Shown here: piece after piece, positions 13,279-64,000 of the stretch
Layout: each line of letters starts with the position of its first letter
Numbering within the stretch: position 1 is the stretch's first letter
Assembly: GCF_002113885.1 (NCBI RefSeq)
Contig: NW_018407978.1
Coordinates: forward strand, 216,693-280,692
Direction of reading: 5' to 3'
Length of the DNA stretch: 64,000 nucleotides
From: Mizuhopecten yessoensis
Taxonomy: Eukaryota
The notes under the pieces: model-generated
Database searches by the model: none
Told to the model about the DNA's origin: nothing
The model's input: the letters and a program-made list of their open reading frames with translations, nothing else
Made by a program: the position numbers and the translations under genes

Positions 13279-13333
13279 AAGAACCCCTGGCGTGGACAAC
13301 AGCCTGGCAACGACGTCGCATGGAAGAGATAAG
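13276..13333 (-). mobile_element. Tc1/mariner transposase C-terminal fragment
   Basis: Minus strand reads LISSMRRRCQAVVHARGSS, matching the Tc1-family C-terminal consensus L..SM.RRC.AV..A.G..T.Y. Confidence 0.65.
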
Positions 13334-14196
13334 TATGTATATGTATGTATTTACATATGTCCTTCCTATTTTCCATTAACTCTATAGAAAGTCAGCCGGT
13401 TGTTCCTGGACAATAACTGCAGTCTACATTATCTGGTCACATGACCACGGTTTCCGCGACGTCAGTGTTAGCAACCTATCCCACCGTTACAGCGACGTCA
13501 TCAATTTGTACACTAGCCGCTATCTTGTTGTTGTCGTTTGGTTCATACAAGTCGCATTTTGATGAGAATAGGAAGGTTAGCTTTTTCTTTTGTATTAGAA
13601 TGCTCTGCACATATAATTGGAGCATGTAACTGCATTTTTAACAGTTGTCGTCTGGTTACATTTTTAATGGCGACCGCTTGAAAGTTTTCAGTCCAATAAT
13701 GGCCGTCTGCGGCTGTTCCAAGAATTGGACCAGTGAGGTTTTGCGGCAGCAGGAAATATAAATTAAGCTTATCAGACTAATTAATAAAAAGACGTCATTC
13801 TATGTATCTGTAACCCAGATTGCATTCATATTCGCTGTAACTGCATTCTGACAGACGTTCAATCCTTAAATAGACCTCATTGGGATCCTCCGCCACTCTT
13901 CCTCTAAGGCCAGGGGTGATGGTAAATAGTTCTTTGTTGGCTCATTATCAAAGTTTTAAACATGCAACAGTTTATCTTTTTTAATTTCTCGGCATTTTTG
14001 TACGCACGACCAATATGAACCTTGATCTTACTGCCTTTCTTTCTACAAATGTGATAGTATCAACTAGGAAACATAGGACAAGGCAAACATGTAATAACTC
14101 ACTGTTAATGACGTCACTATGCATAATTGCAAGAACGCCACGCTGAGAACAGTATCATGACGTCATAAGCGAATAGTCCTTGGAGACTGGACTCGG

Positions 14197-20100: not shown

Positions 20101-22027
20101 CAGAAAGTATACGCAAAACTATTTTTATTTTTATTACACCTCTACTGATTTTTGTCTATATAAAACAATACGATAAGAAATCCTACTTCCATGAAATCGC
20201 TTGAATCTCTCCATCCTAGTTGTATACCCTACACCAACATAGAACTACTCCCTGCAAGAAAGAGTACTACTCCTTTTTTATATTAATTTTGACATATAAT
20301 CGATATATATATATATGTGTGCTAATTTTTAGTAAACATTTCACTGTGTTCTAGTCAGATTAATAGGCCTGTAAATCCCAAGAATATTACAGACAAATCG
20401 AATCACGCGCGTTATGAATATTTGTCAGCTATCCTGTTCAGCGTAATACGACTATTACTCTGAACAGAATGAAGTTCAATATTTACATATATAATATTTT
20501 GATTAATATTGACAAATGATTGATATTTACATTTTCAAAAAAAGAAACAGCCGACAGCGGGTCTGTATTCATGAAACCGTTTTCAAGCTCAAACTAGGAT
20601 TCTCTGTGTTCAAGCCCAGTTTCTTGTTCTGGTGATAAATTAATCAAAGCTCATAAGTGTCAATTATTTGGGAGAATTGAAGAGATAACTTAAGCTGAAT
20701 ATTATGTTCAATGTCTAGACTTTCTGATCATGTCACATGCTTTATGCAAGTTACAAGAAAGTTGGTTTGAGCACAGTCCCATACTTGAGCATGAGCACAC
20801 TTTCATGAATTACAGGCCCCGGGGTGATCGTCTAGCCATCTCCAACGTTATGATTATGACGTCACAATTTCAATGACGTCATGATTATCACTCCAGGTTA
20901 TGGGTTTATAAATCACGAGTGACTTTGATAGGTTCATAAAGAAGCGATGCAGAGCAAAATGTAAATATTTTATTTTCAAGTACTCAAATTTCAAACAACT
21001 CATATCTCCAGCTGTAAGATGCATCGCAAGATATAAATGCTTTTGTTGAAAATGAAAAAATCTTTCATATCAATGACAAATTGATAATGGAAAATTGCAT
21101 TCTAATTTGAGGGTACTTTTCATCTTAACGACTTTCTTTGCAGTCATGAGCGCTTCATTCTCTACATTGATTGTAATACATTAATATTTTCTACAGCGGA
21201 AAAGATGCCTGGTCTAGTGGGTGATGACCTGCTTTAGTGAATGTAAAACTTGAAAAAACATTTCTTGTAATTTACAGAATATGTCGTTTTGATCCCGTTA
21301 ATGAGCATAATGACATAGATTTCTGGAAAAGTGCACAAACCAACCCAAAGTCATCGACATTTGTTTTGATAATTTTATGTTACATTTTTCCCTATTTTTG
21401 TCATTATATTGACGCAGGATCCGTTACCCCCTAGTTGGGTGTGTTGATGATATTTGTGTCACGTAGAATGGAAATCCGTATCAGGGTTACATCATTAATA
21501 TTATATATTTTTAAAAACGCCCTACTAAGCTAAGATGGTCCAGCTCTAAAGCGCTATGCTATACATATTAAGGACGCATCCGCGAATTTTGAAAAACGTA
21601 CCTTGGTGTTGGGTGGGGTAAATATAAGCTATATGTCATTCATGCAAAGGCTTCGTGTGACTGTAGGCGTTGTATTTTTATCATATTAATAGAAATGTAT
21701 CATGAAGCCGAACAAAGGTCCCTGATTTATTCCCTTTAGTTCCAACACTATTACGTGTACAAATGTATCTTAACTACCAGAAATTATATCATGCAGCCGA
21801 ACAAAGGTCCCTGATTTATTCCCAATAGTTCCTACACTATTAAATGTATCGTAATTGCCTCTATCTTTGTATCCCCAGACCTGCGCTCCCTACATATTAC
21901 GGCGTGCGGCCTGTCCGAAATGGAGTGGGCGGAACTTGGTGCCATCAAGGATAGGTTCACACACATGGCGGCTGATCGTAATATTGACCTAAACATCTCC
22001 ACAGATCTCGTACTTGACCCCTTCTGA
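14197..22027 (+). CDS. F-box protein with LRR-like/RNI-like C-terminus (FBXO39/FBXO33-like); exons 14197(or 14260)-15229, 17537-17698, 21879-22027; 426-447 aa
   Basis: F-box motif WENLPDVAMIEVFKLLRDPDKANLALTCTNWARLFYTPSLWR. Splice sites CTAG|gtaagc, ttacag|GAGC...TCTA|gtgagt and ccccag|ACCTG are all phase 1 and in frame. Exon 3 reads NLRSLHITACGL...LDPF then TGA. Confidence 0.88.
15543..15892. mobile_element. 350-bp MITE with ~80-bp TIRs, flanked by TTAA; related copies at ~17148-17245 and ~28107-28437
   Basis: TCATCCTCGATATCCAGGGGTTACGCTCTCTTTCGCTCTCTACACCC... has its reverse complement at the right end; TTAA lies on both sides. Confidence 0.85.
16159..16291. mobile_element. ~130-bp palindromic MITE; other copies at 53976-54112 and degraded at ~23615-23690
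   Basis: TIR TA(A/G)CCCGAGTTTCCTCTGGCCC...GGGCCAGAGGAAACTCGGGCTA. Confidence 0.8.
16413..16523 (+). mobile_element. Solo LTR of a tRNA-containing miniature LTR retrotransposon
   Basis: TGTAGCGG...GGGTTCGAATCCTGG (B box)...TGTTACA; same family as 31370, 33365, 51079 and 57543. Confidence 0.7.
17960..19730 (-). mobile_element. Degraded non-LTR retrotransposon (LINE) RT and 3' region, interrupted by an insertion at ~18575-19290
   Basis: Minus-strand peptides YDLQHGFR, DFAKAFDKVPHKRLQYKLKYY, AKYLGLT, NRSLGILKRNFK, AYKALVRP.EY.SSIWDPH and YKYSFCPHTI, with frameshifts and stops. Confidence 0.85.
18578..18675. mobile_element. Terminal palindrome of a non-autonomous DNA element (Crypton-like hairpin end)
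   Basis: GTTATTGCATG...TTATTACACCC-GAGCGAAGCGA-GGGTGTAATAA...CATGCAATAAC. Confidence 0.5.
19920..19971. mobile_element. 52-bp micro-MITE with 15-bp TIR and 8-bp TSD
   Basis: GTCAAAAC | CACAGGTACTAGCCT...AGGCTAGTACCTGTG | GTCAAAAC. Confidence 0.85.
20559..20819. mobile_element. MITE (PIF/Harbinger-like termini)
   Basis: GGGTCTGTATTCATGAAA...TTTCATGAATTACAGGCCC inverted termini. Confidence 0.6.
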
Positions 22028-22984
22028 TGTCATTAACCTCAGATGATCTGCATAATGGCATATGCAGCGGGATGTGACGTCATATAGGGCGGGGTGTTAC
22101 TTTATACCATCGGAAAGGTCAACAGATGGAGGAAGATGATATAGATTTAAATCACTATTTACCGGATTCTGGATCCTTTATAATTTTAACAATATCTTTA
22201 AAATATAAACGTTTTAAACAAGACCAAAGTGTTGTATGCATATACATTTTGGTTGGAATAAACATAGAAACATGCTTGGCTTTCTTTTAGATATTTTTTT
22301 TAATAATTCGGCTTCTTTCATAATTGCTTGAACATGTACTCTCTGCTTATTTATAGGTCTCGTATTTATGTAGAAGTCGCTTGAATTGTTGCACACATAT
22401 ACGATCCAGTGACCTTTCAAGTGACTCAATGTCAAAATGAAATAAATATGATAGCTCACTTCACATTAAGCTACATAGCAAATGTCGGGAAATAGTTCAA
22501 GGTAATTCATAAAAGAAATGAATGTGGACTTCTCCAGCAAGATAGACGATAACCACATTTGTAACTTAACGTTAGAAAAGTTTGCTAAGCTGTTAACCCT
22601 TAATCCAAGCGGATTTGAAAGAGTCAATTAACATCCTTCTATTTACTGTAAGCTACATACTTAATATAGTTGCCATGAATCTAAGCGTGCTAATTATACA
22701 ATAGAAGTTAACGACGCAAGCTTGATAGAAAGGTGACCGGTACTGAACCGTTGCAGATAGATATGCATTTCTCTCCTAAGGTGTGATTGACACACAATGA
22801 CGTTGGCAAACCACATCTCACATCCATAATTTGCAAAGTAGGTCAAGGTTACTATTATTTCAACAAAGTAAGAAAGCTAACGTTACAGACAATATTCTGA
22901 CTCTACCTTCGTTAGAAGACTTTAACCGATTTCATTTATATGACTTTAAAAGTTAGTCAAGAATATTTTCCTTAAACAAAGTTG

Positions 22985-23480
22985 AGGGTTTGTAAACAGT
23001 GCCAGCTAAAATCTTTCCGGATTTTTCCTGCCTCTTTGATTTGCCTTGTTTTGGCATGTTCCTTTCCAAATATTTCAGCATTGTCCCAATCGACAACATG
23101 ACTGTGGATTCATGGTCTCTTGATGACGATTATATTTCCTGGGTGGCAAATATTTTTTGCTTATTTCAGGTAAAATTGCTCATATTTTTACACCTTTTGT
23201 GTTCTTTGAAGCATATTCCAAATTTCCCGATATCTTACAATCCTTACAGGAAACTTAGGATACAAATCCTGTGTTCTTTAGAACTCCAGTGTTGTCTTTT
23301 GAGTGCACAATACCTATCGGAGTGTTGTAAATGGTCTCATGGTGGTGTTGATATGGTGTTACGTCAAATCCTGGTCATCTTGGCAAATGTATTAGAGGTT
23401 CGTTTCGCCTCGGTGATTTTTATGCAGATTAATCATTTGGGTTTACTTGTCTGCTTTCTTTTCTGTCCATGTCAATACTC
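22985..23480 (-). mobile_element. Penelope-like element GIY-YIG endonuclease remnant (degraded)
   Basis: Minus-strand fragments MRPFTTLR, VSCKDC and HVVDWDNAEIFGKEHAKTRQIKEAGKIRK resemble the PLE GIY-YIG C-terminus H.IDWDN..IL.KE...R.IKEAI.I. Confidence 0.65.
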
Positions 23481-24888
23481 TAGCTTAGCCCTACTCCAAC
23501 AATGTTAGAGGTTTTACACGGCGAAAAACTTTTGACAGGCGCCGTCGCAGTCGGCAAAATCATATCCGATTGAAAAAAGGCCGACCAGCGGCCTCTCATG
23601 TTATGGGAGTAGCTTAGCCCCAGTTTCCTACCAGACATCTATCTGTCACAATGTCCAAGTCTGATGTCAGGGGCAGAGGCCTCTAGCTACATGTATGATA
23701 CCATTGGACAAGAGGTCTTGAGACATAACATAAATACAATTCGTCATATCATCCCAAGTAGGATAAAGTACAACACAGAGACAAGAATAAAATGTTTTTG
23801 CATCATTTATTTCTTTTTCTGTCTCTTTTTACTACATACATCTTCCAGTATATGAAATTTAAGCTGAACAAAACCTCACCTCACTCAACATAACAAATGG
23901 CTTGTCTTTCTAATAACCAAATAATACCGATTTCGTTTGTTATATACAGTACTAAACCACAAACACTTAAAAATGTAATGTACAATATCAACAGTGTATT
24001 TATAAACAAAATACATAAAAAAATATATACAAAGTCAGAGTATAAGAACATTACAATGTATGTAAAATTAATAGCAATTCTATACAGATGTAACCCTTCT
24101 ATTCAGTTAACACTGGTAATTGACTCCTGTGGAAAAATCAGCAACAGTCCAATATCCATAGATTTTGAATTGACAATGTCTAATGCTGTCACTTTATTGC
24201 AAGTTGTGACAGTTTAGTGATTAATACTCGGAATTTCCGACAGATGTTTTGCTAACTGAAAATTCTGAGTTTCTTGCCAATTGAAGTCTAACAGTTAGGA
24301 TAGTTATTGCTACTAGTGTTGTAGTATTTACATTTACTCATTCACCCCTGAAGACACATTTGAACCCTTCCAATTCAAAAGTTGGAATACTTCATTATGA
24401 AATTTCAGGGGTGAATAAGTTAATAAACTGTTAAAAGTGGCACCTGGTTAGGGAAGGCCCTGTCGATCAGCATTCTATGGAAATGTCTGCATTTATGGCA
24501 CAAAACTATTCCAGTAACACTGCAAGCAGGATGCTTGTTATGGTGAATGGTCTGTTTTTCAAATATCATTACAAAATTTCCTACATTGGAAAATGTGTAA
24601 TTCCAGATAAAAAACACCTCATTGGAACCAATATGCAAACAAGGTTCCAAAGTAAAACAGTAATTAGAATGTTAGTGCTACGAAACATCTCGAACAAGAT
24701 TCTTTTCTCATTAGCAGTTCACTATGCTATTGCAGTTTTGTTGTAAAACTGTTTACGACAGACATTGCACAAATCTTTTGCAATCAGAGATGAACCTTCT
24801 AGATCAAAGAATATTGACAGAAACCTGAATTCTCACAGATTTGAGATTGCTGATATTTATTACAAGTGGCCAACATCGGTCCAACTGT

Positions 24889-27800
24889 TTACACTAGTTT
24901 GACTTCTTTGTTTGCTGATATGGTGCAGAGTTTCAATGCCCGCAGAACCTGTGGGAGATTAACGACATACATGAGTAAACTTGCAGGATAAAATCTGAAA
25001 ATATAACATCATCAGTGACTTCACAATAATTACCATACTTAGTTATTGAGGTGTTAACTGCCCATCAACACTATAAAGAGGTCTTTAGGGCCAATAACAT
25101 ACCTTACTTGAAGTTATAAGTTATTGGCCGCATTTTATTGGCAATATTGAATTATTATACAATAAATCATCATTTATTAAATGTAACCATCTTAAAGGCA
25201 GAAACTATAACATCTTGCACCTAAATGTATTTTAATATTACACAATCAACCACTATGTATGAATGATACATAATAGGTCACCATGTCTGCTCTATGATTT
25301 ATACAAACTCGTGTATAATACCTACCTTTAGTTTTGCCTCTCCTGTGTTACCAGATACCTTCAATCCCATTTTGAACATCTCTCCTGGATTAAGTGCTTT
25401 ACTACAGAATGATTTTTAGAATTTAAAAGGCATTATTTGAATGTATACAGAAAAAGGTGTACATCTCTAACAATTAAAATAAAACTGTACACAGATATAT
25501 AATGTATTTGTTAAAGATATCAAAGACATATGTTGTAAACATAGTTTTCTGTTGACAATGTAAGGGTGACCTTAATATTAGACAAGGTGATGGCATCTGC
25601 ATTTAGAGAATGTGAGGCCCTAATAAACTCTATTTTTCTATAGTAGCGGATCTTTCCAATGTTTTATTCAGAATATTTATTAACCTACACCAAAAAATGT
25701 GAAAAACTAGAACTGTAATTCGGAGGATAACTAATACCCCCACAGATGCTGGTAGTTTATACATCATTTAGTGACCTTGACGTCAACTTACTGAAATGGG
25801 AACTCGCTCAAAATAGTTTGGCTCTTTACATGTCATATAGGCGAAGTTTCATCAATATACAAACAAAATTATAATCAGCAGAGCGAGTTTTTCGGGACAA
25901 GTTATTTCGCATTAAGGACCATAACTACCTGAAATTAAAATGCTGGTGCACAACTACTTATGTAGTTATACTGATCATTCAGGTGAAGTTTCAATAAAAT
26001 CTGCCTATTAGTCAAAGTTACTGCAGACGACAGACATACAGACATCAAGCGGGGGGTTAACAAAAATTAAAATTGCAAACTTGATGCTACAATTGTTATA
26101 TACCTGTTGTTTTCTTCTTTGAAATGCCTCCAGAGTATACGATATACCTGCAAAATATAGGGCGATACAGGTCATGACATGACAATATAAATTTGGGGAT
26201 AAACGTGTTTTAAATTCTGTTTTCAATGTCTCACTAATTCAGAGTAAAAGAATGTCTATTTCATGAAAAAGAAACCATTATTGTGTAACATTGTGTGAAT
26301 GTTTAGACAGATAGAGATGTGAATACCTTGCTTGTGCCCTACATCCTATTTACAGCTATATGATCATTTAAGGAAGAGCAAGGTTTTGGTGGAAAACAGG
26401 AGTACTCCGAGAAAAACCACCAACCTGCAGACAATAAATAGCAACTGCCTCATATGCATGTAGGTCACGAACCTGTGACCCACTGGTGGTCGACTAGTGA
26501 TCGTAGACGTCAAACACCTTGACCACACTCGGCCGCCAAGTATCTGTATACTAACAGAAATGACCTCCCAATTAGGCTTATAAATACTAACAGAATTGAT
26601 TTCCTTTTCACACTTACAGTATTGATGTCCGCTAGTTTACACCTGCCTCGGATTAGTTCAGACACAGATTCAAACTCCTCCTGTGTTATATCTAAACACT
26701 CGGAGGAATCAGCACGCCGTGACGAGGGAGACAACTGTGGTTCTGGAACTTTAATAAAGACATAATTGTAGTAGTTAATATAAGTGTCTCTATACATTCT
26801 ATAGAGGTTTTCTGTATTGGTCATAAGTATAAACTAACACAGTTCATACCAGTAGATACTTTAGGTACAATAAACTTAGTTACAACAATTACCTCCAGGG
26901 TCATTGCGTTAGTACAACCTTTAATTATCTGCTTTTAAATAATTTGCTCATAATATGTTTGCATTGTGGACAAATATTTTCCTAAATTGCACAATTCTTT
27001 CATATTCATGGCATAACAATAAAATCAAAATGTGCACCCGCAATGGTTATCTTGGTGACTAAAATACAGGGCTTTCAGTTCTCTTTAGAATTTTTTACTT
27101 CACAAAATAGCTCCGACTCTCAGGTTTGGAAGGATATATGTCTATTAGACATGTGTTTTGACTCTTCAGATTTCAAGGAAAAGGAGATTTGACTTCTGAA
27201 ATTGCTAGATTGATATCAAGGGTCATTTGAAAGACCTAAATTAGAAAAGTGATATTGACAATGTTGATGGTATTGTGTAAATTTAAAAACCCATTTAACT
27301 GTTCCAGGAAAACAAGAATGGGGTATCGATATACACAACTAAAAAGAAATATCTATTTGAGGCCAGACTCATGTATTCCTTGTGGAATTCGTCTGCTGAG
27401 TAACACAGAATTTCGCTGAACTTTTTGCACGGACGTTGGATCTCCCCATCCCCGTATTTTACAACAATTTTTTTTTCCAAACTCATTCTCGGAGGTCCGG
27501 ATGGAAGCAAGTAGAGGATTTTTGAATATGGGAGAAAATAAACATGAGTGCCTGGAGAAAACCCATGTGGTTGGGCAGGTATAATTACCTTTTCTTTTCT
27601 GACCAGGGAATCAAACGTGAATATCCTAGTGAAAGGTGAGTGCGTTTTCTACCTGACCACAGTGGTATGGATAAAGTGTTACAATGCCAAATTAAAATTG
27701 GTACTCACTTGTGCAAACTGCTGGTTTTGAGAGTTCCTCAGGTACTTCGGGAGCTGTGTTGGGTATACCAGTGCTGGTTGATTCCTCTTCCGTGTTGTGG

Positions 27801-49411: not shown

Positions 49412-51078
49412 TTAAGCACTTGATTCAATGGATACCTCATCTGAAGCAATATTTGTATTAAAATGTATGTGATGTATTTGTTATAATCTAATGGCTTTAG
49501 AAGAGCATGTGATATTGTTACTAGAATGTCTTTCATTATCAATCTGTTTATGTGAAATATTTAAATTTCACTGCATATTTGTCACCATTTTCTGTCCTAA
49601 AATTTAGAATTCACAGACCATAGACAATGGGTCTTTGGGGTTTATGTGACATAGGGTAAATGAAATAAGTGATTCCAAAAGACTTTCAGTGTTTTAATGG
49701 TGAGTGTTTATGGGCCTGTCATTAAATTCAATCGCGGAATTGAAATACTGTAGCTATTGTTCTTCTGCTAAAATCTTTGTCTAAAATACATGATTTTAAG
49801 AGAGGCAAGAGGGGTGGAACAATACCAAATTTCTTTCTGCTCTTTCCAAATATGGCTTCAGTTTCTGATTGTGATATCTAGAAAATTTGATATGTTTAGT
49901 GTTGAATTTGCATTGCCTATGTACTGTTTTATCAAAACATTGGTTAAGAGGTGGAGAGAGAAAACATTCATTCATTACGTTGGTATGTGCTGCAGAATTT
50001 GGTGTTGTAACGAATCTCGGCAAAGCTACAGTTCTGGTCCAAATTCATCTCTCACCTTGGGGGTGAGAGATTCTATTAATTCTCCCCGAAACCTTGGGAT
50101 TCTCAACCTGAGGGGGAAGAATCTTAAGTTACTAAACATGAGGCTTTGTTTAGTGTTTGGCAACTAAAGAATCTTTCCCCGAGGGTTGAGATTCCCCTAT
50201 CTCACCCTCAAGGGGGTAAATGATTCTTTTTCTCTTACCCTGTTCACTCATTATGTATCATATACATAATGTAAAGTTAACATTACTGGCTAAATTCAGG
50301 GTTGACGTGACGTTGGTGGATTGTTGATGCGACATCATTGTATTGTTGATGAGTACTACTTTGTACATAAATTGTGGTCACATTGATCTATACTATCCAC
50401 TCAACTGACATCTGCATGTTTTTCAAATATTTCCTAGTTCTAAAATGGACAAAAACGAATGCCAAAAATGTGGTACATGTATGCGGTTCAAGACTGCATG
50501 TCTTATGACATGGTACTAAGTCAGTTAATAGCCCTTTCTTGAAGAATGTGAAATTTCCTCAATTTTCATCCAATTTACCAATGTTTTACTTAGACAAAGT
50601 TGGTTTGCTACTGATTTACTTTAACAACGCAAGTATACATGTATATGTCCCCCTTAATATTACATGTGACTGCCAAATCATGTGATTGTTATTCCGATAC
50701 TTGTATCTCAGAACCGACATATATTGATGTAAAATTATCGCAAGATAGTCGGGATGCTTTAAGAATTTTATATTTACCAAAATATGTTTGTATGCTGTAT
50801 TTAAATAATGTAGACAATATATTATCAGAAACATCAGGTATAAAGAAAGTTCCTGTAGATTATCAATGTTGTCATTATGGTCTTCAGTGTATATGATCAT
50901 GTCATTCAATTAGGTTGAAATTGTATGTGTAGTTCAATTTCCCTTACCTGCGATAAATGATCCATTCCTTTGGGTTACTATATAATTATCATTGTGTTTG
51001 TGGGACTATAAAGGAATTATTGCCTGCATTATTATTGTATGGAACCTGGCTCAGGGTTGATCATGCCCACCCTCAACA

Positions 51079-51173
51079 ATGTAGCTCAACTGGTTAGAGT
51101 AAATAGTGTCAATCGTTCAGAGGTCTGGGGTTCAAATCCCAGTTTGGCCGTGCAATTTTCCTCTCCTGTTACA
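51079..51173 (+). mobile_element. Solo tRNA-like LTR (degraded)
   Basis: TAGCTCAACTGGTTAGAG...GGGGTTCAAATCCC...CTCCTGTTACA. Confidence 0.6.
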
Positions 51174-51529
51174 TTATACTCTACGTAAGTCCATAAAGAT
51201 GTAGAGGAAATGATTTTCTACATATACTTTGGACATGTCAATACATCAAAATATTGCAACCTTATTAAAATCAATCTTAATACCTATCCTCTAATTATGT
51301 GAGAGTATTGTAGAGGAAATGATTTTAATTATATTGAAAATATTGGGATAAGTTAGTTCTATTTTGCTTTTATTACCAGTATAATTATTCATTATTCATC
51401 ATGTGCCAATATCTAAATAAATCATTCCTCAGAATAGAAATTGTTCCTTGTTTTTCATCTTCCATTAATTGTTACATAGATTTAATGAACAAATTTGTAC
51501 ATGCAGCATGTACCATAGGTTAAATGAAC

Positions 51530-54966: not shown

Positions 54967-56607
54967 TCACGCATCACTTTCATCACTCTCATCCGTATCT
55001 CTCTCCTCTTCCTCCTCTTCGAGCTCCTCTTCCTCTGATTCACCCTCTTCACTGTCCTCCCCAAAGAAGTATGGGTAGTCATCACTGGATATATACCCGT
55101 ATACTTCTTCCTCCTCGCCAAACTCTTCTCCCAACTCCTGCCACTTCATGTCCCAGTTCCCTATAAAGTCTGGGTTTTCGATGTCCCTGTGACATACCCA
55201 GTTAACATTGAAACAGATGATACCTTCATTCTCCCAACATTCTCTCTCCGCACCTGAAAAACTGTGTAAATAACCACTAAAATTAGCAGGAGGTTCTAAC
55301 GTAACGTCTGGGGGTTCTGTACTCCCAAATGGTCCAAGTCTCCTTCCAAGATTGGTGACAAATTCTAAACAATTTATCATCATATATTGAGTCCTTAATT
55401 TAACTTGTACGATCACCTCTCCCTTTTCTAATTCTACCTCACAAACATCAGTCACTTCTGACGAGTCCTTAGGAAGGCCATGGTGATGCCAGAAGCTATC
55501 AAACACCTCCATACCCACAATCACATTTTCTTTCTGACTCTCATTAAAACGTGCTACAATGACAATCTTGGAAATCTGTGACCGTTCATTTGATGTCTCG
55601 CAGGTTCCATCATTGAAGTATCCTTTAGAAAAGTTACTGCAATCAGATTTACCACTGTATTTCTTGCTGTCAGGAATGATCTTGGTGTTATCCTGGTCTC
55701 GTCTTACCACCCAGTGAAGCGGAGGAGATCTGCAGTTTTTTATAGACATCAACAGAGCCTTATTAGTGACATCTTTATGATCCAGGAGGTATTTCCTAAC
55801 AGTATCGAGCTTCTCCTCCAAGAGAATATCTGAGTTATTCTCTAAATGTTTTTCCCAATCACAGTAATCAATGTAGATCAGTCGGGCTGCTACAACCAGA
55901 GAGTAGATTTGTTCTCCATTCAGTTTTGTCTCCTCGTTCTGCCCGGAAATGTAACAAATTGCTGCCTCAAGTATGGCCAATTCATTAAGGTCATTGGGAA
56001 GGGGGTAGCCGCCACGAAACACGATCAAATTATCTTTACTCAACAACTCAAGAACACAGTCATAGGGAATGGCCGAGAACTCCTCCATCCGGCTAGCTTC
56101 TTCCAGATGCCGACCAATCAGTTTTATACATCTGTTTTTGATCTTTTCTAAATAGAATTTGGCAGCAAATGATAGCATGGAAACACAGTTACTTCTGTCA
56201 ACACTTTTGAGTAACAATCTCTGACATGACTCCTTTACAAACTCGACCTGAAGATAGTCAGCCACAATGAACAGACTCTGTACATTGTTACCAGTGACCT
56301 CGACTGACCCTGTGTAGGCAAACTGGAGCAAAAGTTCCAGACTGGAAAAGTCTACATCATGTAGTACCACGTCAGATTTGTTCTTGGCGTCCATGTGAAG
56401 GAGGACCTTGAAGTACTCGGAGAGGGATGCTAGCACATTCTTGTGAGCTTTGACACTCTTCTCACCAACATGGAGAGTGATATCACAGAACTCCTCCTCT
56501 CGCCAAGACTTGTGTAGGGCCTTCAGCACAGCTCGGGGATACCCCGGGCTGGACACCAATTTGGAAACAGTTGAATCCAAGCCAGAATCGAATGATTTTG
56601 CTTCCAT
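54967..56607 (-). CDS. BTB-BACK protein with C-terminal jacalin-like (beta-prism) domain and acidic tail, 546 aa, single coding exon
   Basis: BTB: FCDITLHVGEKSVKAHKNVLASLSEYF...LLQFAYTG...ADYLQV. BACK: SNCVSMLSFA...EEFSAIPYDCVLELLSKDNL...AAICYI. Jacalin-like: ELEKGEVIVQV...INCLEFVTNLGRRLGPFG...YLHSFSG. E/D-rich tail. Acceptor tctttttag at 56639-56640, upstream of the ATG. Confidence 0.9.
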   Translation of the reverse strand: MEAKSFDSGLDSTVSKLVSSPGYPRAVLKALHKSWREEEFCDITLHVGEKSVKAHKNVLASLSEYFKVLLHMDAKNKSDVVLHDVDFSSLELLLQFAYTGSVEVTGNNVQSLFIVADYLQVEFVKESCQRLLLKSVDRSNCVSMLSFAAKFYLEKIKNRCIKLIGRHLEEASRMEEFSAIPYDCVLELLSKDNLIVFRGGYPLPNDLNELAILEAAICYISGQNEETKLNGEQIYSLVVAARLIYIDYCDWEKHLENNSDILLEEKLDTVRKYLLDHKDVTNKALLMSIKNCRSPPLHWVVRRDQDNTKIIPDSKKYSGKSDCSNFSKGYFNDGTCETSNERSQISKIVIVARFNESQKENVIVGMEVFDSFWHHHGLPKDSSEVTDVCEVELEKGEVIVQVKLRTQYMMINCLEFVTNLGRRLGPFGSTEPPDVTLEPPANFSGYLHSFSGAERECWENEGIICFNVNWVCHRDIENPDFIGNWDMKWQELGEEFGEEEEVYGYISSDDYPYFFGEDSEEGESEEEELEEEEEERDTDESDESDA

Positions 56608-57542
56608 TTCTGATCATTAAGACGGGTATCTTGTTCAGCTAAAAAGAAACAAAATAAGATCTGCAATAAATTAATGTCACCAATATATCGTTAGTACAAT
56701 GTTTATCATTAACCTTAACTAATTACAACATTCTTTGAATAATCCTACAAACTTACATGTCTTTAATTTATGTGTTATAAATAACAAATGGCTTCTTTTT
56801 CAAATTAAACTTGGTCCTATAATTTTGCATAGTTGTAAGGAATAAATGAAAATGATGGGCCCATTTTATGCTGCAACTGCATACTTGTAGCGGAACTGGA
56901 CTGGCATAAACTTGACAACTTTTTGAAATTTTCATGGGGGAGATTCTGCATTTTGAAAATTAAAACATAAATCAAATGTGTGTATGTACCCCCTAGAGAG
57001 GAAATAACCCTTGAAAATGACATATTTTGAGTTGTTCTTTCGAATGAAATCAGGAGATCTTAGAATACAGAAATAGTTTAGCAAATTCATTGGTTGAAAA
57101 TACTAAATTTAAGGGTCCAAAACGGGAGTATCCCTCCTAATAGGGAGAGTTGGCAAGTACAAGTACTAGTATATATATGCAATTGATATTAGTACAGTGT
57201 AATTTCTTAAATTAATTACATTCATTCAATTACTTGTACTACTGTATCTATAAGGATTAAAGGAAAGCTGAAAACCCTGATAATGGCTGATATTCAATCT
57301 TAATAAAAAAAAAATCTGTAAAATCACAGCTAGGAATCTGAAATTTTACGGGTATAGCGGTACCAGGGATGACACGTATACTTTGTAAGTTTCTGGTAAT
57401 TATAAAACAACATAAAACTTTGATCATACAAAAATCGCTGTTAATAATTGCTCCAAAGCGATCTCCCTAAAACTATGTACGTGCACCGACTTGCATTGTA
57501 TTTTTATTTACATCTAATTCCGTGCTACATGATGCATATATT

Positions 57543-59011
57543 TGTAACGGAACTGGATTGGATCAATCATTCCGATGGTCCGGGGTTCAAACCCCAGCCT
57601 GGCCGTGCATTTTCCCTCTCCTGTTACAGTGGTGCCAGCTCACTCAGGTCACAGTGACCAACTCTTGTTTCAAGCATTCTGTGTACTGTAACAAGGGGAT
57701 AACCGAACCCGGGTTGTAAATACATGAAGTTGTGTATTCTGGGGGCGAAGACCAAGAAAAAGGAGGTAGGAATGTAGCGGAACTGGACTGGCATAAACTT
57801 GCCAATTTTTTGAAATTTCCATGGGGGAGATCAAAGGTGTTTGAAATTCTGACTGTACTTGAGATACATGCATGTATATATCATATAAAAAAAACATATA
57901 CAAATAATGGTATTACTACTTTTTTTATACAATTTTTTTTAATGATATATATCTCAATTTACAGTCAGTAGAAGTCCCCGTCCATCATCTCCTACAACAG
58001 ACTAGCAGTGGGACTAGGAGTTCCCAAGCCAACAACATCAGGCAAATAAGCACCAGAGTCAACGCATATAAACATTTATTCGTCCCTGCTATAATCAAGA
58101 TGTGGAACTCAATACCATCAGATATCAGAGGACTACCAACAGTAGACAGTTTCCGGCACCACATACAGACCATTGATGTGGCCGGACTCAACTCATCCCC
58201 AGGCACTAGACAGGACTCCGGACTTGTACATTGTAAATACCAGATTTTAGATGTACATACAGACAGATGTAAATAGCAAATTGTTTAGCTGTATGGCCAA
58301 TAAGCGCCGGAGAGCCTGGAGTAGTGACACTCATCTGATGAGTCAACTCCATAACGGGAAGAAGAAGAAGAAGAGTATTTCAAACACCTTTGGCTTTGGG
58401 TAGATTCTGCATGCTCAAAATTAAAATATAAATAAAATGTGTGGGATACCCCCTAGAGACCAAATTAAACTTTAAAATGGCATATTTTGAGTTTTTCTTA
58501 GTATGCAATCAATAGATCTTAGAATATAGGAACAAGGAAGCGTATATGTTGTTTTTATCATATAAAAACCGAACCTAATGAATTCACTGGTTGAAAACAC
58601 TCAATTTAAGGGTTCAAAATCGGGAATTCGAATCTCCCTCCTAAATAGGGAGGGTTAACGTTGGCAAGTATGGACTGGGTCGATCGTCACCGACCAGGGT
58701 CGTTTTCGTTTAAACGTGTCAGACCGGTCGGACCGCTGTTGTTCGTTTATTAAATAAAGTTGGACCTAGTATTCCGATGCTGCTTTCAGGCGAGCCATGG
58801 CAAAGCATTGCAAGGCCTGCATAAACATGTGCAGGTCCGCCAGGATTTATACCCGAAATTGTTACATTTATAAACGGCCAAACCGGTTGTTCCGCAAAAA
58901 TGACCAGGCCCCTGATAGCCCAATCGAATTGGTAGAGCGTCCGTCTATAGTTGGGAGGGTCCCGGGTTCGAACCCCCGGCCCTGGCCGTGTATTTTTCCT
59001 CGCCTGTTACA
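57543..59011 (+). mobile_element. tRNA-LTR TRIM whose second LTR is interrupted by nested DNA elements and a LINE 3' end
   Basis: LTR1 57543-57628, PBS GTGGTGCC, PPT AAGAAAAAGGAGGTAGGAA. LTR2 starts at 57773 and finishes ...GGGTTCGAACCC...CCTGTTACA at 59011. Confidence 0.7.
57990..58375 (+). mobile_element. LINE 3' end fragment
   Basis: Reads RQISTRVNAYKHLFVPAIIKMWNSIP (LINE C-terminal Y..SF.P..I..WN.LP motif) and ends in a (GAA)n tail at ~58358-58373. Confidence 0.7.
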
Positions 59012-59152
59012 TATTAATTTGTGGTAAGGTGTATTGGTAGACGAGGCTAGTACCAGTGTTTTACATACAATTTTATGTAGTTACATGAATTTGAATGCAA
59101 TCTTTGCGAGAAGAAAAGAGAGATCTCAAAAATTGCAGTAGTATTTACTTAC

Positions 59153-59200
59153 TCGTCTTAGAACGGCATTCGAGTCCGACATACACGCGGGAAAATGTGG
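59153..59200 (-). other. Probable 5' UTR exon of the BTB-BACK-jacalin gene (5' boundary uncertain)
   Basis: A perfect GTAAGT donor on the minus strand at 59152-59147, in unique CpG-rich sequence, pairs with the acceptor at 56639-56640. Confidence 0.5.
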
Positions 59201-59228
59201 AACTCTTTATTGTGTAGAGGTATAATTG

Positions 59229-62200
59229 CGTTGCTACTAATTACAGCCCGATAGAGCCCGGCACAGCCCGGTAGTGATATATTGACCGCCCGGGCGTTTG
59301 TTTCCACTTACATATACCATTACAACTGTATGTTTTGCATTATTTGTAACAATATGAATGCAATGATCAAGAAGTTGTGAACAAATCATTAAATTTGATC
59401 GAATTATGGTTACTTGAAATGAGTAACATATGGCAACAACCCGCTGGAGAAGAGCCAGACCATTGTTATTTGCAATACAAACACCGCCCGGGCTTTCACG
59501 TGTGTAGTAAACTGTATTGACACAACTTATTCGTATAGCTTTAGGAACGAAAAACACAAAACTGAAGAAATATCAAAGTATATGTTCATAATTAGCCAAG
59601 TTATTGTAATTTGAAGTTAACTAACACTGCAGGGCTTGTCATTTCAATATTAGGACTGCCCGGGCGCTACCCTGTAAAGTTAAGTACTTCACTCGGGTTA
59701 ATCAATGAATGAGAAATAAAACATAAAAGACAGTGTGAAAATATCTCCATTGTAAAAAGATTTTGCTGATCTAACTTTAGATACTTCGCTACGTATACAT
59801 TACGCTGAAGCTCATATCACGCGTGTTATTTGCAGCATCGGGACCGCCCTGGCTTTCATCTTTATCGTTAGGTCAATTAATTAAAACTCTTTATTTGTTA
59901 AGATGTGTGTGTAACCACGGACTTGGATATCTAATCCACAGACTAATTCCGTGGTGTAACTAACACAGTGCTGACAAAAATGTTAGAATACATTGTATGT
60001 TAATTATTGGCGGAGTTACGGTGTTTTGAAATTATAAGTTCCTCAACCATACGTATACGCTACAAAGAGGTAATTAGATGTACTTTCTGAAAATATATGA
60101 TATATGTCTTTAAAAAAGGTTCTGCAAAAATCGTGTGTAGCAATTTTATGCAAAGTGATCCGCTACTGCCGTAACAACTGTACTTGTTATTTATAATATC
60201 GGGAGCGCCCGAGCCTTCAACTTACCATTAACTAGACTTAACAAGAAAAAATGAAATCGTTCAGTTGCCGGTGTATGTTTTGAAATTAGTTACTTCTCAT
60301 CCGTACGATTAAGCTGAAATCATGAGTATTGTTTGTAATATCGGGTTCGCCCGGGCATTCACCAGATTCATTATTTGCTCAACAAACACTCTTCTGTTGT
60401 TCATTAACTCAATTCTGAAAAATTGTGGGATATTAAAAATTGGCATAGTTATGATATTTTTAAATTAGTTACTTCTCAAACATACGCTATTATACAAAGC
60501 TGAAAGCCCATTTCAAATCCATGTAATTCAGTCAATTTTCAACATCATTTCATAGTTTCTTGAACTAAGTAATCTTTACACAGTCTTCTTCATGTTAGGC
60601 TAGGGGGACAAGGGGTACCGACCTAGGTAAAAGCCCGGGCTGTCGGGGCGACATGAACAAAGTAACGGCTACCGTGCCGGCTCCAGCCAAATAACCAATT
60701 TTAATTCTACCCATTTCAAATCGATGTGATTCAGTCAATTTTCAACATAATTTCATAATTTCTTGAACTAAGTTCTCTTTACACAGTCAAATTTCAAATG
60801 TTTTTTCTACTTCTTGTTAGGCTAGGGGGTACTGCCCCAGGTAAAAGCCCGGGACATTTGATAAATCCTAAAAAATAATATTAAAATGAGACATCTTATA
60901 TATAGTATATGAGATGCATAAAAGATATCTCATTTAATTTCTTTACACGAATAAAATAGTTTACATAATCTCATGAAAACAGTTCAAGTTGGCTTGTCAT
61001 ACCAATTACCACTTTGTAAGATGCTCCAGGGATGCCCTGGATGTTCTAATATCTTGTCATGCGGTTTATGGTGTAACACTGTGTGTGAACAAGAAGGGGG
61101 TATCTCAATATTTGTAAAGTGAATCCTTGAAATCATATGTTAGCATTTGTTCTGTGTCTCACGACACATTTGTATGCCTTAAACTTGACAAACATCTCTC
61201 TGTATGTGAGAAAGATGTCTTTATTTGCTCATTGTATATTCCGCCTGATCGAGCGGCGTATTACAGGCTTTTCAACAGAGATTTATCTTATGATCTTGAA
61301 AATGAAATAGCTGTATTCTCTCTGGAAGGCAAAGTTTTTTTTAGTTGGTGACTTTAATGGAAGATGTTCAAATTTAAAGATTTTTTGGATCAGGATGACG
61401 CGAGTAAGGATATTTTTGATAATCTATCTGATATATATATTATATATACTTACCAAACTGATGTACATTTACCCTCACGAGTGTGTCCCGATAGGGTAAT
61501 GAACTGGTCTGAAGTTGCTACACTTATGTGTATACTCCGACATACGGATCTGAAATGGTAGACATTCTGATGGCTTCGCTAACGGACGTGGTCCTACGGG
61601 TTGTAGCGTATAGTAGATTGCATATAGTAACAACGCCTGATGTTTATCAGTATGACTGCATTTGTAACTTGCGGGTTCAATACATTTTCTGACCACGCAC
61701 CTCTACATTTTGTACTCAGTTGTAAGCTAATTATTAGTATCAGTGATCAGGACTCAACAAATGTACACACGTATAGTACACATGCTATTCTTCGCTGGGA
61801 CACAGACAATGCTGAAGATAGTATTAGGGCGATTTTTGATAATATCGATTACATTAACATTCGTGTTGAAGAGAACGATTTATCGACTGATAACCGGTAT
61901 TGAGAGGTGTTTTACCTCTTTGTAAATATTGTAAAAACCCTTATGTTATCTTTTCATTCAACTACGCAATGTAATAGAGAGTTTACATCAGCCCCCCCCC
62001 CCCCCCCCCCCCCCCCCCGCCCCCTCTATAGGCAAGGGGGTCAACCTAATATATCATGTGACAAGCCTTGATTTAACCAGTGTAAAATGTTGCAAAGGCG
62101 ATATACGTGAATGCTTTGAAAATATTTAATTATTCCTCATCTCGAGAAAATCATGACATACTTATTCATGTAAGAGTTTGTATAAGTCTACTGGGCGACA

Positions 62201-63267
62201 ATAAATAAAGCGATCATATTTGAAAGCACAAGGTACTATTATGGATTTGTTGAGAGTGAGCAACCCTTCATTTTTTTCATCATTGTGTTAGTTACACACA
62301 CATCTTAACAAAAGCAGATTTTAATTGACCTAATTCACCATAAAGATGAAAGCCTGGGCGGTCCCGATGCTGTAACTTGAATAACATGCGTGATATGAGC
62401 TTCAGCGTAATGTAGCGAAGTATCTCAAGTTAGATCAGCATAAATCTTTTTACGATGAAGTTATGTTCACACTGTCTTTCATATTATATTTCTTAATCAT
62501 TTATGAACCCGAGTAAGATACTTTTAATAAATTAACTTTACAGAGTTATGCCCGAGCAGTCATAATTAATATTGTAAATAATACGTCCTGCAGTGTTCCA
62601 AATTACAATAACTTGGCCAATTATGAACATATTTTGATGTTATATTCAGTTTTGTATTTTTCGTTTCTAAACTTATAAGAATGACGTATTTTAGTCCAGC
62701 TTACCAATTACCGAACGGAAGCCCGGGCGGTGTTTGTTTAAGGATCAACTTGAATATATTTATTATGTTAAAAATATATTCAAGTTAATCCTTATAATTT
62801 AATCTACTTTACACAATTCCTTGAGAAATCAAGTTTTATTGATGGACTGTTTTCTCTTAGAAATTATTACGCCGCTGTATCAGGCAATCAAAATTTAAGC
62901 GACGTTACAAACGGCGACGTCATTTTTTTACGTTATGGGCTGATAACATATTTTTTAGGCCAATGAAAAGGTTTGTTACATGCGAGATTAAATCATATTC
63001 AAATAACAAACGTCTGGCTCTTCTCCAGCGGGTTGTTGCGACGTTACTGATTTCAAATAGTCATAACTCGCTCAAATGTTAAGAATTTTACACAACTTCT
63101 TGATCATTACATTCATATTATTACAAACAGTGCAAAATATAAAGATGTTATGGTGTATACGTGGAGACAAACGCCCGGGCGGTCAATATATCACTAGACA
63201 CTACCGGGCTGTCCCGGGTTGTAACCTGGTCGACACGGACTGTACCGGGCTGTAACTAGTAGCACCC
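59229..63267. mobile_element. 4-kb Mutator/Foldback-like element with ~740-bp diverged inverted arms and a 9-bp TSD
   Basis: 59229-~59970 is the reverse complement of ~62281-63267 (e.g. GTGATATATTGACCGCCCGGGCGTTTG; GCAACAACCCGCTGGAGAAGAGCCAGAC). Flanks GTATAATTG (59220-59228) and GTGTAATTG (63268-63276). Confidence 0.8.
61095..62270 (+). mobile_element. Degraded LINE ORF2 apurinic-endonuclease region inside the inverted-repeat element
   Basis: Frameshifted motifs GGISIFVK, VCLKLDK, FICSLYIPP, GDFNGR and FSDHAPL are typical of the APE domain. Confidence 0.75.
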
Positions 63268-63299
63268 GTGTAATTGGTCTGCAAACCAAAACAAAAAAT

Positions 63300-63593
63300 A
63301 TGGCCGCCGTGGCCTGGGTCATTCTCCAGCTGTTTCTGTTTTTCGTGAAACACAGCAAACGAAACCCTTTTTGGGCGCTCGTAAATGTGTGCATTGTGCT
63401 TCTGGCTCCAGCTCTTGCAGCGTCAGATAGTTCCGCTTCAATCGAAGTGAGCATTTACGACACACTAAGTCACCAACCTAAGCTGTCAAAATCTGACAGT
63501 TCGTCAGCTGTATCTGACGTGGTTGCGGAAAATATTCAGGGTAAATTTGCGTTTATCGGACAGAAGAAACAGGCTGATGGCAGGCTTCATATG
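63300..63593 (+). CDS. Exon 1 of a probable PA-TM-RING E3 ubiquitin ligase (RNF43/ZNRF3/RNF215-like); gene continues beyond the window
   Basis: Signal peptide (..WALVNVCIVLLAPALA-AS), then SASIEVSIY...IQGKFAFIGQKKQADGRLHM|gtgaga. This resembles the ZNRF3/RNF43 PA-domain start (recalled: AFVEVVLF...LTGRFSRAG...AEGEIVQ). The donor is phase 0. Confidence 0.6.
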
Positions 63594-64000
63594 GTGAGAC
63601 TTTAATTTCTTCAAGCTAGCTCCTTTTTTAAAAATATTATAAAAGGCTGAACAGCTGTTGAACATAGGAATTTAACGTGTATGGTCAGTTTTAGCTGACT
63701 AAAGTACAACCTGCCGATTGAGCTATATATATATATATATATAGTTATAAAGACCTTATAGCTATATTCACCTATAAAATATAAATTATCTGATTATAGC
63801 TGTATTGACCTATATTTTCTCATATTTCAATTTTCATTAGATTAAAGCTAAGTCGCATAAAACAATAAGGTTTACGGTAATGTTGACTACAAAAAGAATA
63901 TATATACAGTTAGATGTTTATTTTCATTTTTCATAAATGTAAAATATTTCCGAAATTTTTAAACAATTTTTACATATTTTCTATAAACAATAAATATATT

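What the first reader, a model, noticed from the sequence alone, without database searches (positions are those of the whole stretch)
59140..63310. A 4-kb Mutator/Foldback-like element has split an ultra-compact bidirectional promoter; its arms may now serve as outward promoters
Seen: inverted arms end at 59229 and 63267 with a 9-bp near-TSD (GTATAATTG / GTGTAATTG). The right end is only 32 bp from the PA-RING ATG (63300). The left end is ~75 bp from the putative 5' UTR donor of the BTB-jacalin gene (59152). Removing the element leaves ~100 bp between the two genes, with an ATTGG at the target site. Established: 9-bp TSDs and long TIRs typify MULEs, and MULE TIRs can carry promoters. Inference: the arms have diverged and accumulated insertions, so the insertion is old and tolerated. 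Both genes may now initiate in mirror-image TIR sequence.
Basis: partly seen in the sequence, partly recalled or inferred. Interest (0 to 1): 0.75.

Follow-up and report, generated by a model that had tools for sequence, protein, structure and literature searches.

The report
Old Mutator-type transposon splitting a scallop promoter
A decayed 4-kb Mutator-family "foldback" transposon sits between two back-to-back scallop genes at a site that is intact in two other scallop genera, but the available RNA starts just outside it, so it looks like a tolerated insertion rather than a new promoter.

Summary
Window 59229-63267 is a non-autonomous member of a multi-copy foldback-type Mutator-like (MULE) family.

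- **Structure:** the inverted arms are about 750-1000 bp long. The termini match the family consensus. The 9-bp duplication is 59220-59228 and 63268-63276, 8 of 9 bases identical.
- **Family:** two long copies encode a MULE-type DDE transposase. The window copy is a deletion derivative of them with two nested repeats.
- **Empty sites:** Argopecten irradians and Pecten maximus keep the same divergent gene pair (BTB-jacalin and PA-RING). Both have the site empty with one copy of the target.
- **Split promoter:** the element landed about 30 bp upstream of the PA-RING ATG. A roughly 23-bp block next to it is conserved in all three species. A conserved splice-donor-like motif faces the BTB gene. 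This supports the split of a compact shared promoter.
- **Arms as promoters:** this is not supported. Two independent RNA assemblies of the PA-RING transcript begin at 63292 and 63294, outside the element. Three RNA runs show no coverage over the last 200 bp of the right arm, and only a trace in the bin that holds the left arm's first 63 bp. RNA contigs cannot fix a start site, so a start in the last 25 bp or so of the arm is not excluded.
- **BTB exon 1:** its position remains unproven.

This is an ordinary kind of event, documented unusually cleanly.

The parts
59220..59228 (.). Left copy of the target-site duplication (GTATAATTG)
   Evidence: A single homologous copy is present in Pecten maximus and Argopecten irradians.
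59229..63267 (+). Whole non-autonomous foldback-type MULE copy (4039 bp). Its first and last base are both C, the family's asymmetric outermost base.
   Evidence: Terminus consensus from 30 loci and 6 paired copies. Collinear with the long copies.
59229..60064 (+). Left arm: terminal GTTGCTAC..., three 10-bp TACAGCCCGG-like units, then subrepeats carrying CGCCCGGGC motifs
60181..61087 (+). Internal family sequence (about 165-bp and 203-bp subrepeats) that is also found inside the long copies next to the transposase gene
   Evidence: matches at C5594 4560-4936 and 10144-10211 and at C76676 8132-8512.
61085..62266 (.). Nested unrelated repeat (at least 10 copies elsewhere, 78-89% identical) with short ORFs that look like LINE endonuclease by eye only, and a poly-C run at about 61990-62030
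   Evidence: Absent from the other family copies examined. No Pfam hit.
62269..63267 (-). Right arm, the inverted copy of the left arm
62738..62996 (.). Nested high-copy short repeat inside the right arm (more than 1000 first-look candidates in the genome). A related copy also lies in the Pecten locus.
   Evidence: (depth spike).
63268..63276 (.). Right copy of the target-site duplication (GTGTAATTG)
63292..63593 (+). PA-TM-RING gene exon 1 as seen in RNA contigs: ATG at 63300, splice donor after 63593
   Evidence: records 8 and 16. 81-83% identical to the Argopecten and Pecten exon 1. RING and PA exons lie downstream.
59186..59208 (.). Non-coding block conserved in three scallop genera. It is now 4 kb from the PA-RING start and stays on the BTB side.
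59147..59153 (-). Donor-like GTAAGT motif facing the BTB gene. It is conserved in position in Pecten, with a GT 4 nt further on in all three species. Its use is unproven.
   Evidence: The one RNA contig here (58919-59154) runs through it.
54967..56607 (-). BTB-BACK-jacalin gene, single coding exon. A conserved splice acceptor lies just upstream of the ATG.

Best explanation
Window 59229-63267 is an old, dead, non-autonomous copy of a foldback-type Mutator-like (MULE) DNA transposon family of this scallop genome. It is an internal-deletion derivative of 12-17 kb family members that encode a MULE DDE transposase.

It integrated with an 8-9 bp staggered cut in the lineage of this species, after that lineage separated from Pecten and Argopecten. 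The insertion point lies about 30 bp upstream of the PA-TM-RING start codon, inside the short conserved 5' region that this gene shares head-to-head with a BTB-BACK-jacalin gene.

Shown here: the element, its family, its TSD, empty orthologous sites in two genera, and continued spliced transcription of the PA-RING gene.

Inferred: the insertion fell between the two core promoters rather than into either. The PA-RING transcript still starts in native sequence within about 25 bp of the right end. The BTB non-coding exon 1, if it is where the conserved donor-like motif suggests, starts 30-75 bp left of the left end. That is why the insertion was tolerated and could decay in place.

The arms now occupy the upstream positions of both promoters. 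There is no evidence that transcription starts in them.
For: - Family and termini: at least 48 genomic matches; terminus consensus and TSDs in 6 paired copies.
- Derivation: the window copy is collinear with the long copies minus internal segments. The two long copies are 95% identical internally. There are no private TIRs around their transposase gene.
- Transposase: D1 GIDRTFN, D2 VIGSDQE, C(2)H CTRH and W..E DWKNNACE are all present. Relatives in the same genome match a 188-aa piece at E 1e-31 to 1e-35. Three of them hit Pfam MULE PF10551 at E 1e-5 to 2e-4, and PF00872 more weakly at E 6e-4 to 0.03. For the one relative tested, the ten best named Atlas look-alikes were all MULE or MULE-clan clusters, best score 0.95.
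- Empty sites: Argopecten has only 23 nt between the blocks that match 59177-59208 and 63282 onward. Pecten has 10 nt between the matches to 59189-59223 and 63282 onward, exactly as predicted after removing the element and one TSD copy.
- RNA: the PA-RING contigs begin at 63294 and 63292 and are spliced at 63593. RNA depth over 63073-63271 is zero.
- Independent DNA: a run from another individual bridges both junctions.
- Age: arms 77% identical against 86-95% in other copies; two nested repeats.
Against: - Contig ends are not transcription starts. 5' coverage falls off, so the true PA-RING TSS could lie up to a few tens of bases upstream, possibly in the last 25 bp or so of the arm.
- The raw-read run gave only one or two reads on exon 1.
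- The BTB 5' exon is not shown by any RNA here. The single low-depth contig at 58919-59154 runs through the proposed donor.
- The link between the TIR family and the transposase rests on two copies that are 95% identical, so effectively on one lineage. Both have the reading frame broken at the same places.
- The Pfam MULE hits are below the curated cut-off (22-26 bits against 27.6).
Confidence: 0.72

Rival explanations
1. One reading: the two arms act as mirror-image outward-reading promoters, as maize Mu ends do, and both flanking genes now start transcription inside TIR sequence.
For: - Maize Mu insertions often give transcripts that start within Mu and read outward (bioRxiv 10.1101/2023.06.05.543741).
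- The right end is only 25-27 bp from the first transcribed base seen, so the arm necessarily fills the -30 to -1000 positions of the PA-RING promoter.
- The conserved upstream block has been moved 4 kb away, yet the gene is still expressed and spliced.
Against: - RNA depth is zero over the terminal 200 bp of the right arm in three RNA runs. Over 59093-59291 it is zero in two of three, and the only listed contig there ends at 59154, outside the element.
- Two independent transcript assemblies end at 63292 and 63294, with no arm sequence and no upstream exon.
- The 18 nt before the ATG are identical in all three genera, as expected for a native start region.
Confidence: 0.15
2. The element is functionally inert for the BTB gene because BTB does not share this promoter. 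On this view its start site lies elsewhere in the 2.6 kb between 56607 and 59228, and the 'compact bidirectional promoter' never existed.
For: - No RNA supports an exon at 59153-59228.
- The ATG-to-ATG spacing varies widely: 1066 bp in Argopecten, about 5.4 kb in Pecten, and 2.65 kb here without the element.
- The Pecten gene model starts far away, inside the RING gene range.
Against: - A strong splice acceptor just upstream of the BTB ATG is conserved between this species and Argopecten, so an upstream non-coding exon is expected.
- The only non-coding block of the spacer found conserved lies next to the PA-RING start. A donor-like motif facing BTB follows 35-45 nt later, identical in Pecten, whatever the spacer length.
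Confidence: 0.3
3. The element belongs to another superfamily with 8-bp TSDs (hAT, P/Galileo-like foldback, Merlin), and the MULE gene in the long copies is a passenger.
For: - Most copies have 8-bp TSDs, the typical hAT and P length.
- Foldback architecture also occurs in the P superfamily, as in Galileo (PMC3688188).
- Only one lineage of long copies links the TIRs to the gene.
Against: - No other transposase-like ORF was found in the long copies.
- The MULE gene has no TIRs of its own.
- Sequences on both sides of the gene recur in the short copies in the same order and orientation.
- 8-10 bp TSDs, subterminal tandem repeats and asymmetric outer motifs are described for the MULEs Muta1 and Tm1.
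Confidence: 0.05

Closest known systems
Tm1, the Mutator/Foldback family of root-knot nematodes (PMC3169594)
   Same: - Composite TIRs of variable length built from a variable number of short tandem repeats.
- Asymmetric outermost motifs.
- 8-10 bp (mostly 9 bp) TSDs without a target consensus.
- Many MITE-like and deleted derivatives, with few transposase-bearing copies.
- Nested insertions.
   Different: - The Tm1 transposase is of the Phantom type with a FLYWCH domain. No FLYWCH domain was detected here.
- The long copies here add PHD-like and weak OTU-like N-terminal regions and a separate GDSL-esterase ORF.
- The asymmetry here is a single base, not 7 bp.
Muta1 of Aedes aegypti, a biochemically characterised animal MULE (PMC5499845)
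   Same: - 8 or 9 bp TSDs.
- A terminal motif followed by subterminal tandem repeats.
- A DDE triad with a (C/D)(2)H motif after the second D and a W before the E, all present here.
   Different: - Muta1 has 145-bp TIRs that are 97% identical. This family has arms of 0.7-1 kb with long internal subrepeats (foldback architecture).
- No activity is shown here.
Maize Mu elements with outward-reading TIR promoters (bioRxiv 10.1101/2023.06.05.543741)
   Same: Same superfamily, and an insertion at the 5' end of a gene that stays expressed.
   Different: In maize the transcripts start inside Mu. Here the RNA seen starts outside the element.
Galileo and Drosophila Foldback elements (PMC3688188, PMC3573991)
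   Same: Long, internally repetitive inverted arms.
   Different: Galileo encodes a P-superfamily transposase with a THAP domain. This family encodes a MULE-type DDE enzyme.

Membership tests
Mutator-like (MULE) superfamily | Transposase with a DDE triad of the MULE/IS256 type | tested here: met
   D1, D2 and E are found in the long copies. Three relatives in the genome hit PF10551 (E 1e-5 to 2e-4) and more weakly PF00872 (E 6e-4 to 0.03), all below the curated cut-offs. The ten best named Atlas look-alikes of one relative are all MULE or MULE-clan clusters.
Mutator-like (MULE) superfamily | (C/D)(2)H motif 15-45 residues after the second D, and a W upstream of the E (as stated in PMC5499845) | tested here: met
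   CTRH lies about 25 residues after VIGSDQE. The W lies 6 residues before the E in DWKNNACE.
Mutator-like (MULE) superfamily | 8-10 bp target-site duplication | tested here: met
   Perfect 8-bp TSDs in three complete pairs, plus a fourth perfect 8-mer (C76334) set 5 nt off the right end. One pair is 7 of 8. The window copy is 9 bp with 8 of 9 identical.
Mutator-like (MULE) superfamily | Long TIRs (over 100 bp) shared by autonomous and non-autonomous members | tested here: met
Mutator-like (MULE) superfamily | Intact, active autonomous copy | tested here: not met
   Both long copies have the transposase frame broken at the same two places. I did not repair or join the frames. This does not affect the classification.
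Phantom subclass of Mutator | N-terminal FLYWCH zinc-finger domain | tested here: not met
   No FLYWCH hit even at E up to 10 in the region upstream of the DDE domain. I therefore do not file it under Phantom.
Foldback-type architecture (structural class, not a clade) | Long arms made of internal subrepeats, variable in length between copies, with little or no unique centre in short copies | tested here: met
   (2-7 terminal 10-bp units).
Bidirectional promoter (divergent genes with starts less than 1 kb apart) | Both transcription starts mapped within 1 kb in the pre-insertion state | tested here: inconclusive
   The divergent arrangement is conserved in three genera, and the ATGs are 1066 bp apart in Argopecten. 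The PA-RING 5' end is seen at 63292. The BTB start is not mapped. The only support for it is a conserved donor-like motif and acceptor.
Mu-type outward-reading TIR promoter | Transcripts that begin inside the TIR and read into the flanking gene | tested here: not met
   There is no RNA on the right-arm end, and the only RNA near the left end lies outside the element. The contigs begin at 63292 and 63294. Resolution is limited to a few tens of bases.

The most novel reading that the evidence does not exclude
The terminal part of the right arm, and perhaps of the left, now supplies the proximal or core promoter of the flanking gene. The insertion moved the ancestral conserved upstream block 4 kb away from PA-RING, yet the gene is still transcribed from within about 25 bp of the arm. 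If so, this would be an animal MULE acting like maize Mu as a portable minimal promoter that rescued a split bidirectional promoter.
Probability: 0.15. Interest if true: 0.6.

Novelty: new member of a known kind. Interest (0 to 1): 0.35.

Why it matters
MULEs are known in all bivalves (PMC10294476), and foldback-type MULEs are described in nematodes and insects, so the element itself is ordinary.

The value of this locus is as a clean natural experiment. The exact insertion point is known, the ancestral empty site is preserved in two other genera, a conserved promoter block is now separated from one of its two genes, and that gene is still expressed. With start-site mapping it could show whether a very short native core, about 25 bp, is enough for a promoter, or whether an animal MULE end can replace upstream promoter sequence as maize Mu ends do.

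Tried and rejected
- ARAGORN found no tRNA gene in 56000-64000, although 58918-58990 looks tRNA-derived by eye.
- Strict Pfam scans of the long-copy ORFs gave no transposase family. The identity came only through longer relatives.
- The low-complexity hits of L031:3424-4443 were disregarded as repeat artefacts.
- An exact-protein look-up of the BTB product and of the Pecten isoform X2 found nothing. Isoform X1 worked.
- No second copy of either flank exists in the assembly, so there is no empty-site haplotig.
- No empty-site joint was listed in the one independent DNA run. This does not exclude polymorphism.
- I first read the conserved block as an E2F-type site (GCGGGAAA, recalled from memory) and dropped it as a firm claim, because Pecten has GTGGGAAA there.
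- The TATAA inside the left TSD copy is not conserved either.
- A shared flank next to the terminus in copies L008 and L023-L028 raised the idea that the true terminus lies further out. I rejected this for the window copy because the orthologous empty sites show host sequence right up to 59228.
- I first placed the left TSD one base to the right, then corrected it.
- The PA-RING exons were examined one by one.
- The bacterial promoter scanner was not used because it does not apply to this organism.
Full report
**1.

The repeat finder links 59232-59982 to 62269-63264 through 14 collinear inverted blocks of 22-116 nt, 77-97% complementary. A direct alignment of the left arm with the reverse complement of the right arm is continuous. 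It has one 258-nt insertion in the right arm and a few small indels.

The left-arm terminus finds at least 48 matches in this 988-Mb assembly at 77-89% identity, several of them in +/- pairs 3-17 kb apart. Aligning 30 loci gives a clear family terminus. It reads GGTNCTACTAATTACAGCCCGG, then a variable number (2-7) of 10-bp TACAGCCCGG-like units, then a conserved stretch ending in a CGCCCGGGC motif.

**2. Exact ends and target-site duplication**

Six paired copies show the same geometry: an 8-bp direct repeat, one extra base X, the GGT... terminus, the body, the ...ACC terminus, the same base X again, and the 8-bp repeat.

- X is C/C in the four copies whose internal sequence has the window copy's orientation.
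- X is G/G in the two copies that are inverted relative to it.

So X is the element's own outermost base and is not part of the inverted repeat. The element reads C-GGT...ACC-C on one strand.

The duplication is 59220-59228 (GTATAATTG) and 63268-63276 (GTGTAATTG), 8 of 9 identical. Three complete pairs have perfect 8-bp duplications and one has 7 of 8. The C76334 pair also has a perfect 8-mer, set 5 nt off its right end. The family therefore makes 8-9 bp TSDs.

**3. What family it is**

Two long copies, 12.1 kb on C5594 and 17.5 kb on C76676, are about 95% identical through their interiors. On the minus strand they carry a large gene in three ORF pieces.

- The N-terminal 722-aa piece has a PHD-like cysteine pattern and a weak OTU-protease match (E 0.005, below cut-off).
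- The downstream pieces carry GIDRTFN (first D), VIGSDQE (second D, in a shifted frame), CTRH, and DWKNNACESMNH (W and E).
- These are the DDE triad, the (C/D)(2)H motif and the conserved W that PMC5499845 lists as MULE/hAT hallmarks.
- The 188-aa C-terminal piece finds about 80 relatives in this genome.
- Three longer relatives hit Pfam MULE (PF10551, E 1e-5 to 2e-4, 22-26 bits against a cut-off of 27.6). They hit the bacterial Mutator-family transposase PF00872 more weakly, at E 6e-4 to 0.03.
- For the one relative tested, the ten best named look-alikes in the ESM Atlas all carry MULE or a family of its clan, with a best score of 0.95.
- No FLYWCH domain was detected, so I do not place it in the Phantom subclass.

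The transposase gene has no inverted repeats of its own. The segments on either side of it in the long copies (C5594 4560-4936 and 10144-10211) recur in the window copy (60507-60853 and 60853-60929) and in other short copies, in the same order and orientation. The window copy is therefore an internal-deletion derivative of such a long element.

Both long copies share the same frame breaks, so no intact autonomous copy was seen.

**4. State of the window copy**

Its arms are 77% identical to each other. The arms of five other copies are 86-95% identical.

It carries two nested insertions that are absent from the other family copies examined:

- 61085-62266 is an unrelated repeat with at least 10 copies elsewhere, short endonuclease-like ORF fragments and a poly-C run.
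- 62738-62996 is a very abundant short repeat with more than 1000 first-look candidates and depth spikes in all runs.

**5. The neighbours**

On the minus strand, 54967-56607 is a single 546-aa ORF with BTB (E 2e-26), BACK and jacalin domains.

On the plus strand the ORF from 63300 runs to a GT donor after 63593. PA-like, transmembrane and split RING exons follow within 10 kb. I looked at these exon by exon and did not build or search a joined protein.

The BTB ATG is 2.6 kb from the element, so the compact promoter depends on an upstream non-coding BTB exon.

**6. Orthologous empty sites**

*Argopecten irradians.* The BTB orthologue is 58% identical and lies head-to-head with a 378-aa RING gene. 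The two ATGs are 1066 bp apart. The block matching window 59177-59208 (84%) lies 23 nt from the block matching 63282-63608 (81%).

*Pecten maximus.* The match to 59189-59223 (89%) is followed after 10 nt by the match to 63282-63598 (83%). That is exactly the length expected once the element and one TSD copy are removed. Pecten has a single GTATGGTTG where this genome has the two TSD copies.

Both outgroups lack the element, so it inserted in the lineage of this species. The alternative is two precise excisions.

The three-way alignment shows three features:

- The 18 nt before the PA-RING ATG are identical in all three.
- A conserved block lies at 59186-59208.
- 35-45 nt further on, facing BTB, sits a donor-like motif. 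It is identical in Pecten, with a GT 4 nt further on in all three.

A strong acceptor just upstream of the BTB ATG is shared with Argopecten. BLAST found no other conserved non-coding block in the spacer, whose length is 1.07 kb in Argopecten, 2.65 kb here without the element, and about 5.4 kb in Pecten.

This pattern is what a shared, compact divergent promoter with a BTB 5'UTR intron would leave.

**7. RNA**

I laid four runs on 57700-63650.

- Two RNA contig sets contain PA-RING exon 1. One contig begins at 63294 and continues past the 63593 splice. The other is a 2312-nt contig that ends at 63292.
- Neither carries arm sequence or an upstream exon.
- Depth over 63073-63271 is zero in all three RNA runs.
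- The raw-read run contributed only one or two reads on exon 1, so no strand or start call is possible.
- On the left, 59093-59291 has zero depth in two RNA runs.
- In the third run, a single 236-nt contig of depth 3.4 covers 58919-59154. It runs through the proposed donor and stops 75 bp short of the element.
- A DNA run from a different sample bridges both junctions without mismatch (58855-59284 and 63167-63650). The insertion is therefore real and present in a second individual. No empty-site joint was listed.

Contig ends are not transcription starts. Allowing for 5' fall-off, the PA-RING start lies somewhere between about 63240 and 63292. A start deep in the arm is excluded, but one in its last 25 bp or so is not.

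**8. Reading**

The most likely picture is an ancient MULE insertion between two closely apposed core promoters. Each gene kept its own native start region, and the element then decayed in place.

The arms now fill the upstream positions. The conserved block has been moved 4 kb away from PA-RING, which is still expressed. Whether the arm end contributes promoter activity, as maize Mu ends do, is open. I give it about 15%.

**9. Comparison and novelty**

The closest described systems are:

- Tm1 of root-knot nematodes, with asymmetric outer motifs, TIRs of variable tandem-repeat number and 8-10 bp TSDs.
- Muta1 of Aedes, with 8-9 bp TSDs, subterminal repeats and the same catalytic motifs.

MULEs are reported in all bivalve genomes surveyed. 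This is a new member of a known kind, and a promoter insertion is an ordinary event. The locus is nonetheless a well-defined natural experiment on promoter architecture.

Noticed in passing
window 58695-59065: A very high-copy repeat at 58695-58893 (summed depth 15,000-38,000 in all runs) is followed by a tRNA-like head at 58918-58990, with box-A and box-B-like motifs and then a T-run. A short repeated tail extends to about 59065. It is probably a tRNA-derived SINE. ARAGORN calls no tRNA here. Similar tRNA-like peptide-frame fragments appear near 51039-51188 and 57448-57657.
   Followed up: partly
L033:2208-4376 (-) and L034:2635-3228 (+); the same in L031/L032: The long family copies carry a 722-aa ORF with a PHD-like finger and a weak OTU-protease match fused upstream of the MULE DDE region. 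They also carry a separate 197-aa GDSL/SGNH esterase ORF (Pfam E 1e-11). It is unclear whether the esterase is a captured host gene, a nested retroelement ORF1 or a family gene.
   Followed up: partly
L008, L023, L024, L025, L028 (contigs C4871 and C5557): Five copies share about 30 nt of identical sequence immediately outside the family terminus (ending ...CAGGAAGTGTATAGAGC). Either they sit inside a larger duplicated unit or they form a subfamily with an extended end.
   Followed up: no
G000:C2179:946175-946726: One relative of the transposase lies in an open frame of 1682 aa without stops. It is a candidate intact or domesticated MULE-derived gene.
   Followed up: no
window 59186-59208: This non-coding block is conserved in three scallop genera next to the PA-RING start. 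In this genome and Argopecten it contains GCGGGAAA, which resembles an E2F site (recalled from memory). Pecten has GTGGGAAA.
   Followed up: partly
L061 (Pecten maximus LR736845.1) 10001-25089: The Pecten BTB gene model (347 aa, without the jacalin part) begins 8.6 kb inside the oppositely oriented RING gene range. DNA homology to the full 546-aa ORF continues about 600 nt past the model's end. The annotation there looks doubtful.
   Followed up: no
L061:16901-17015: The short high-copy repeat nested in the window's right arm (62825-62947) has a 76% match in a Pecten maximus RING-gene intron, so that repeat family predates the split of the two genera.
   Followed up: no
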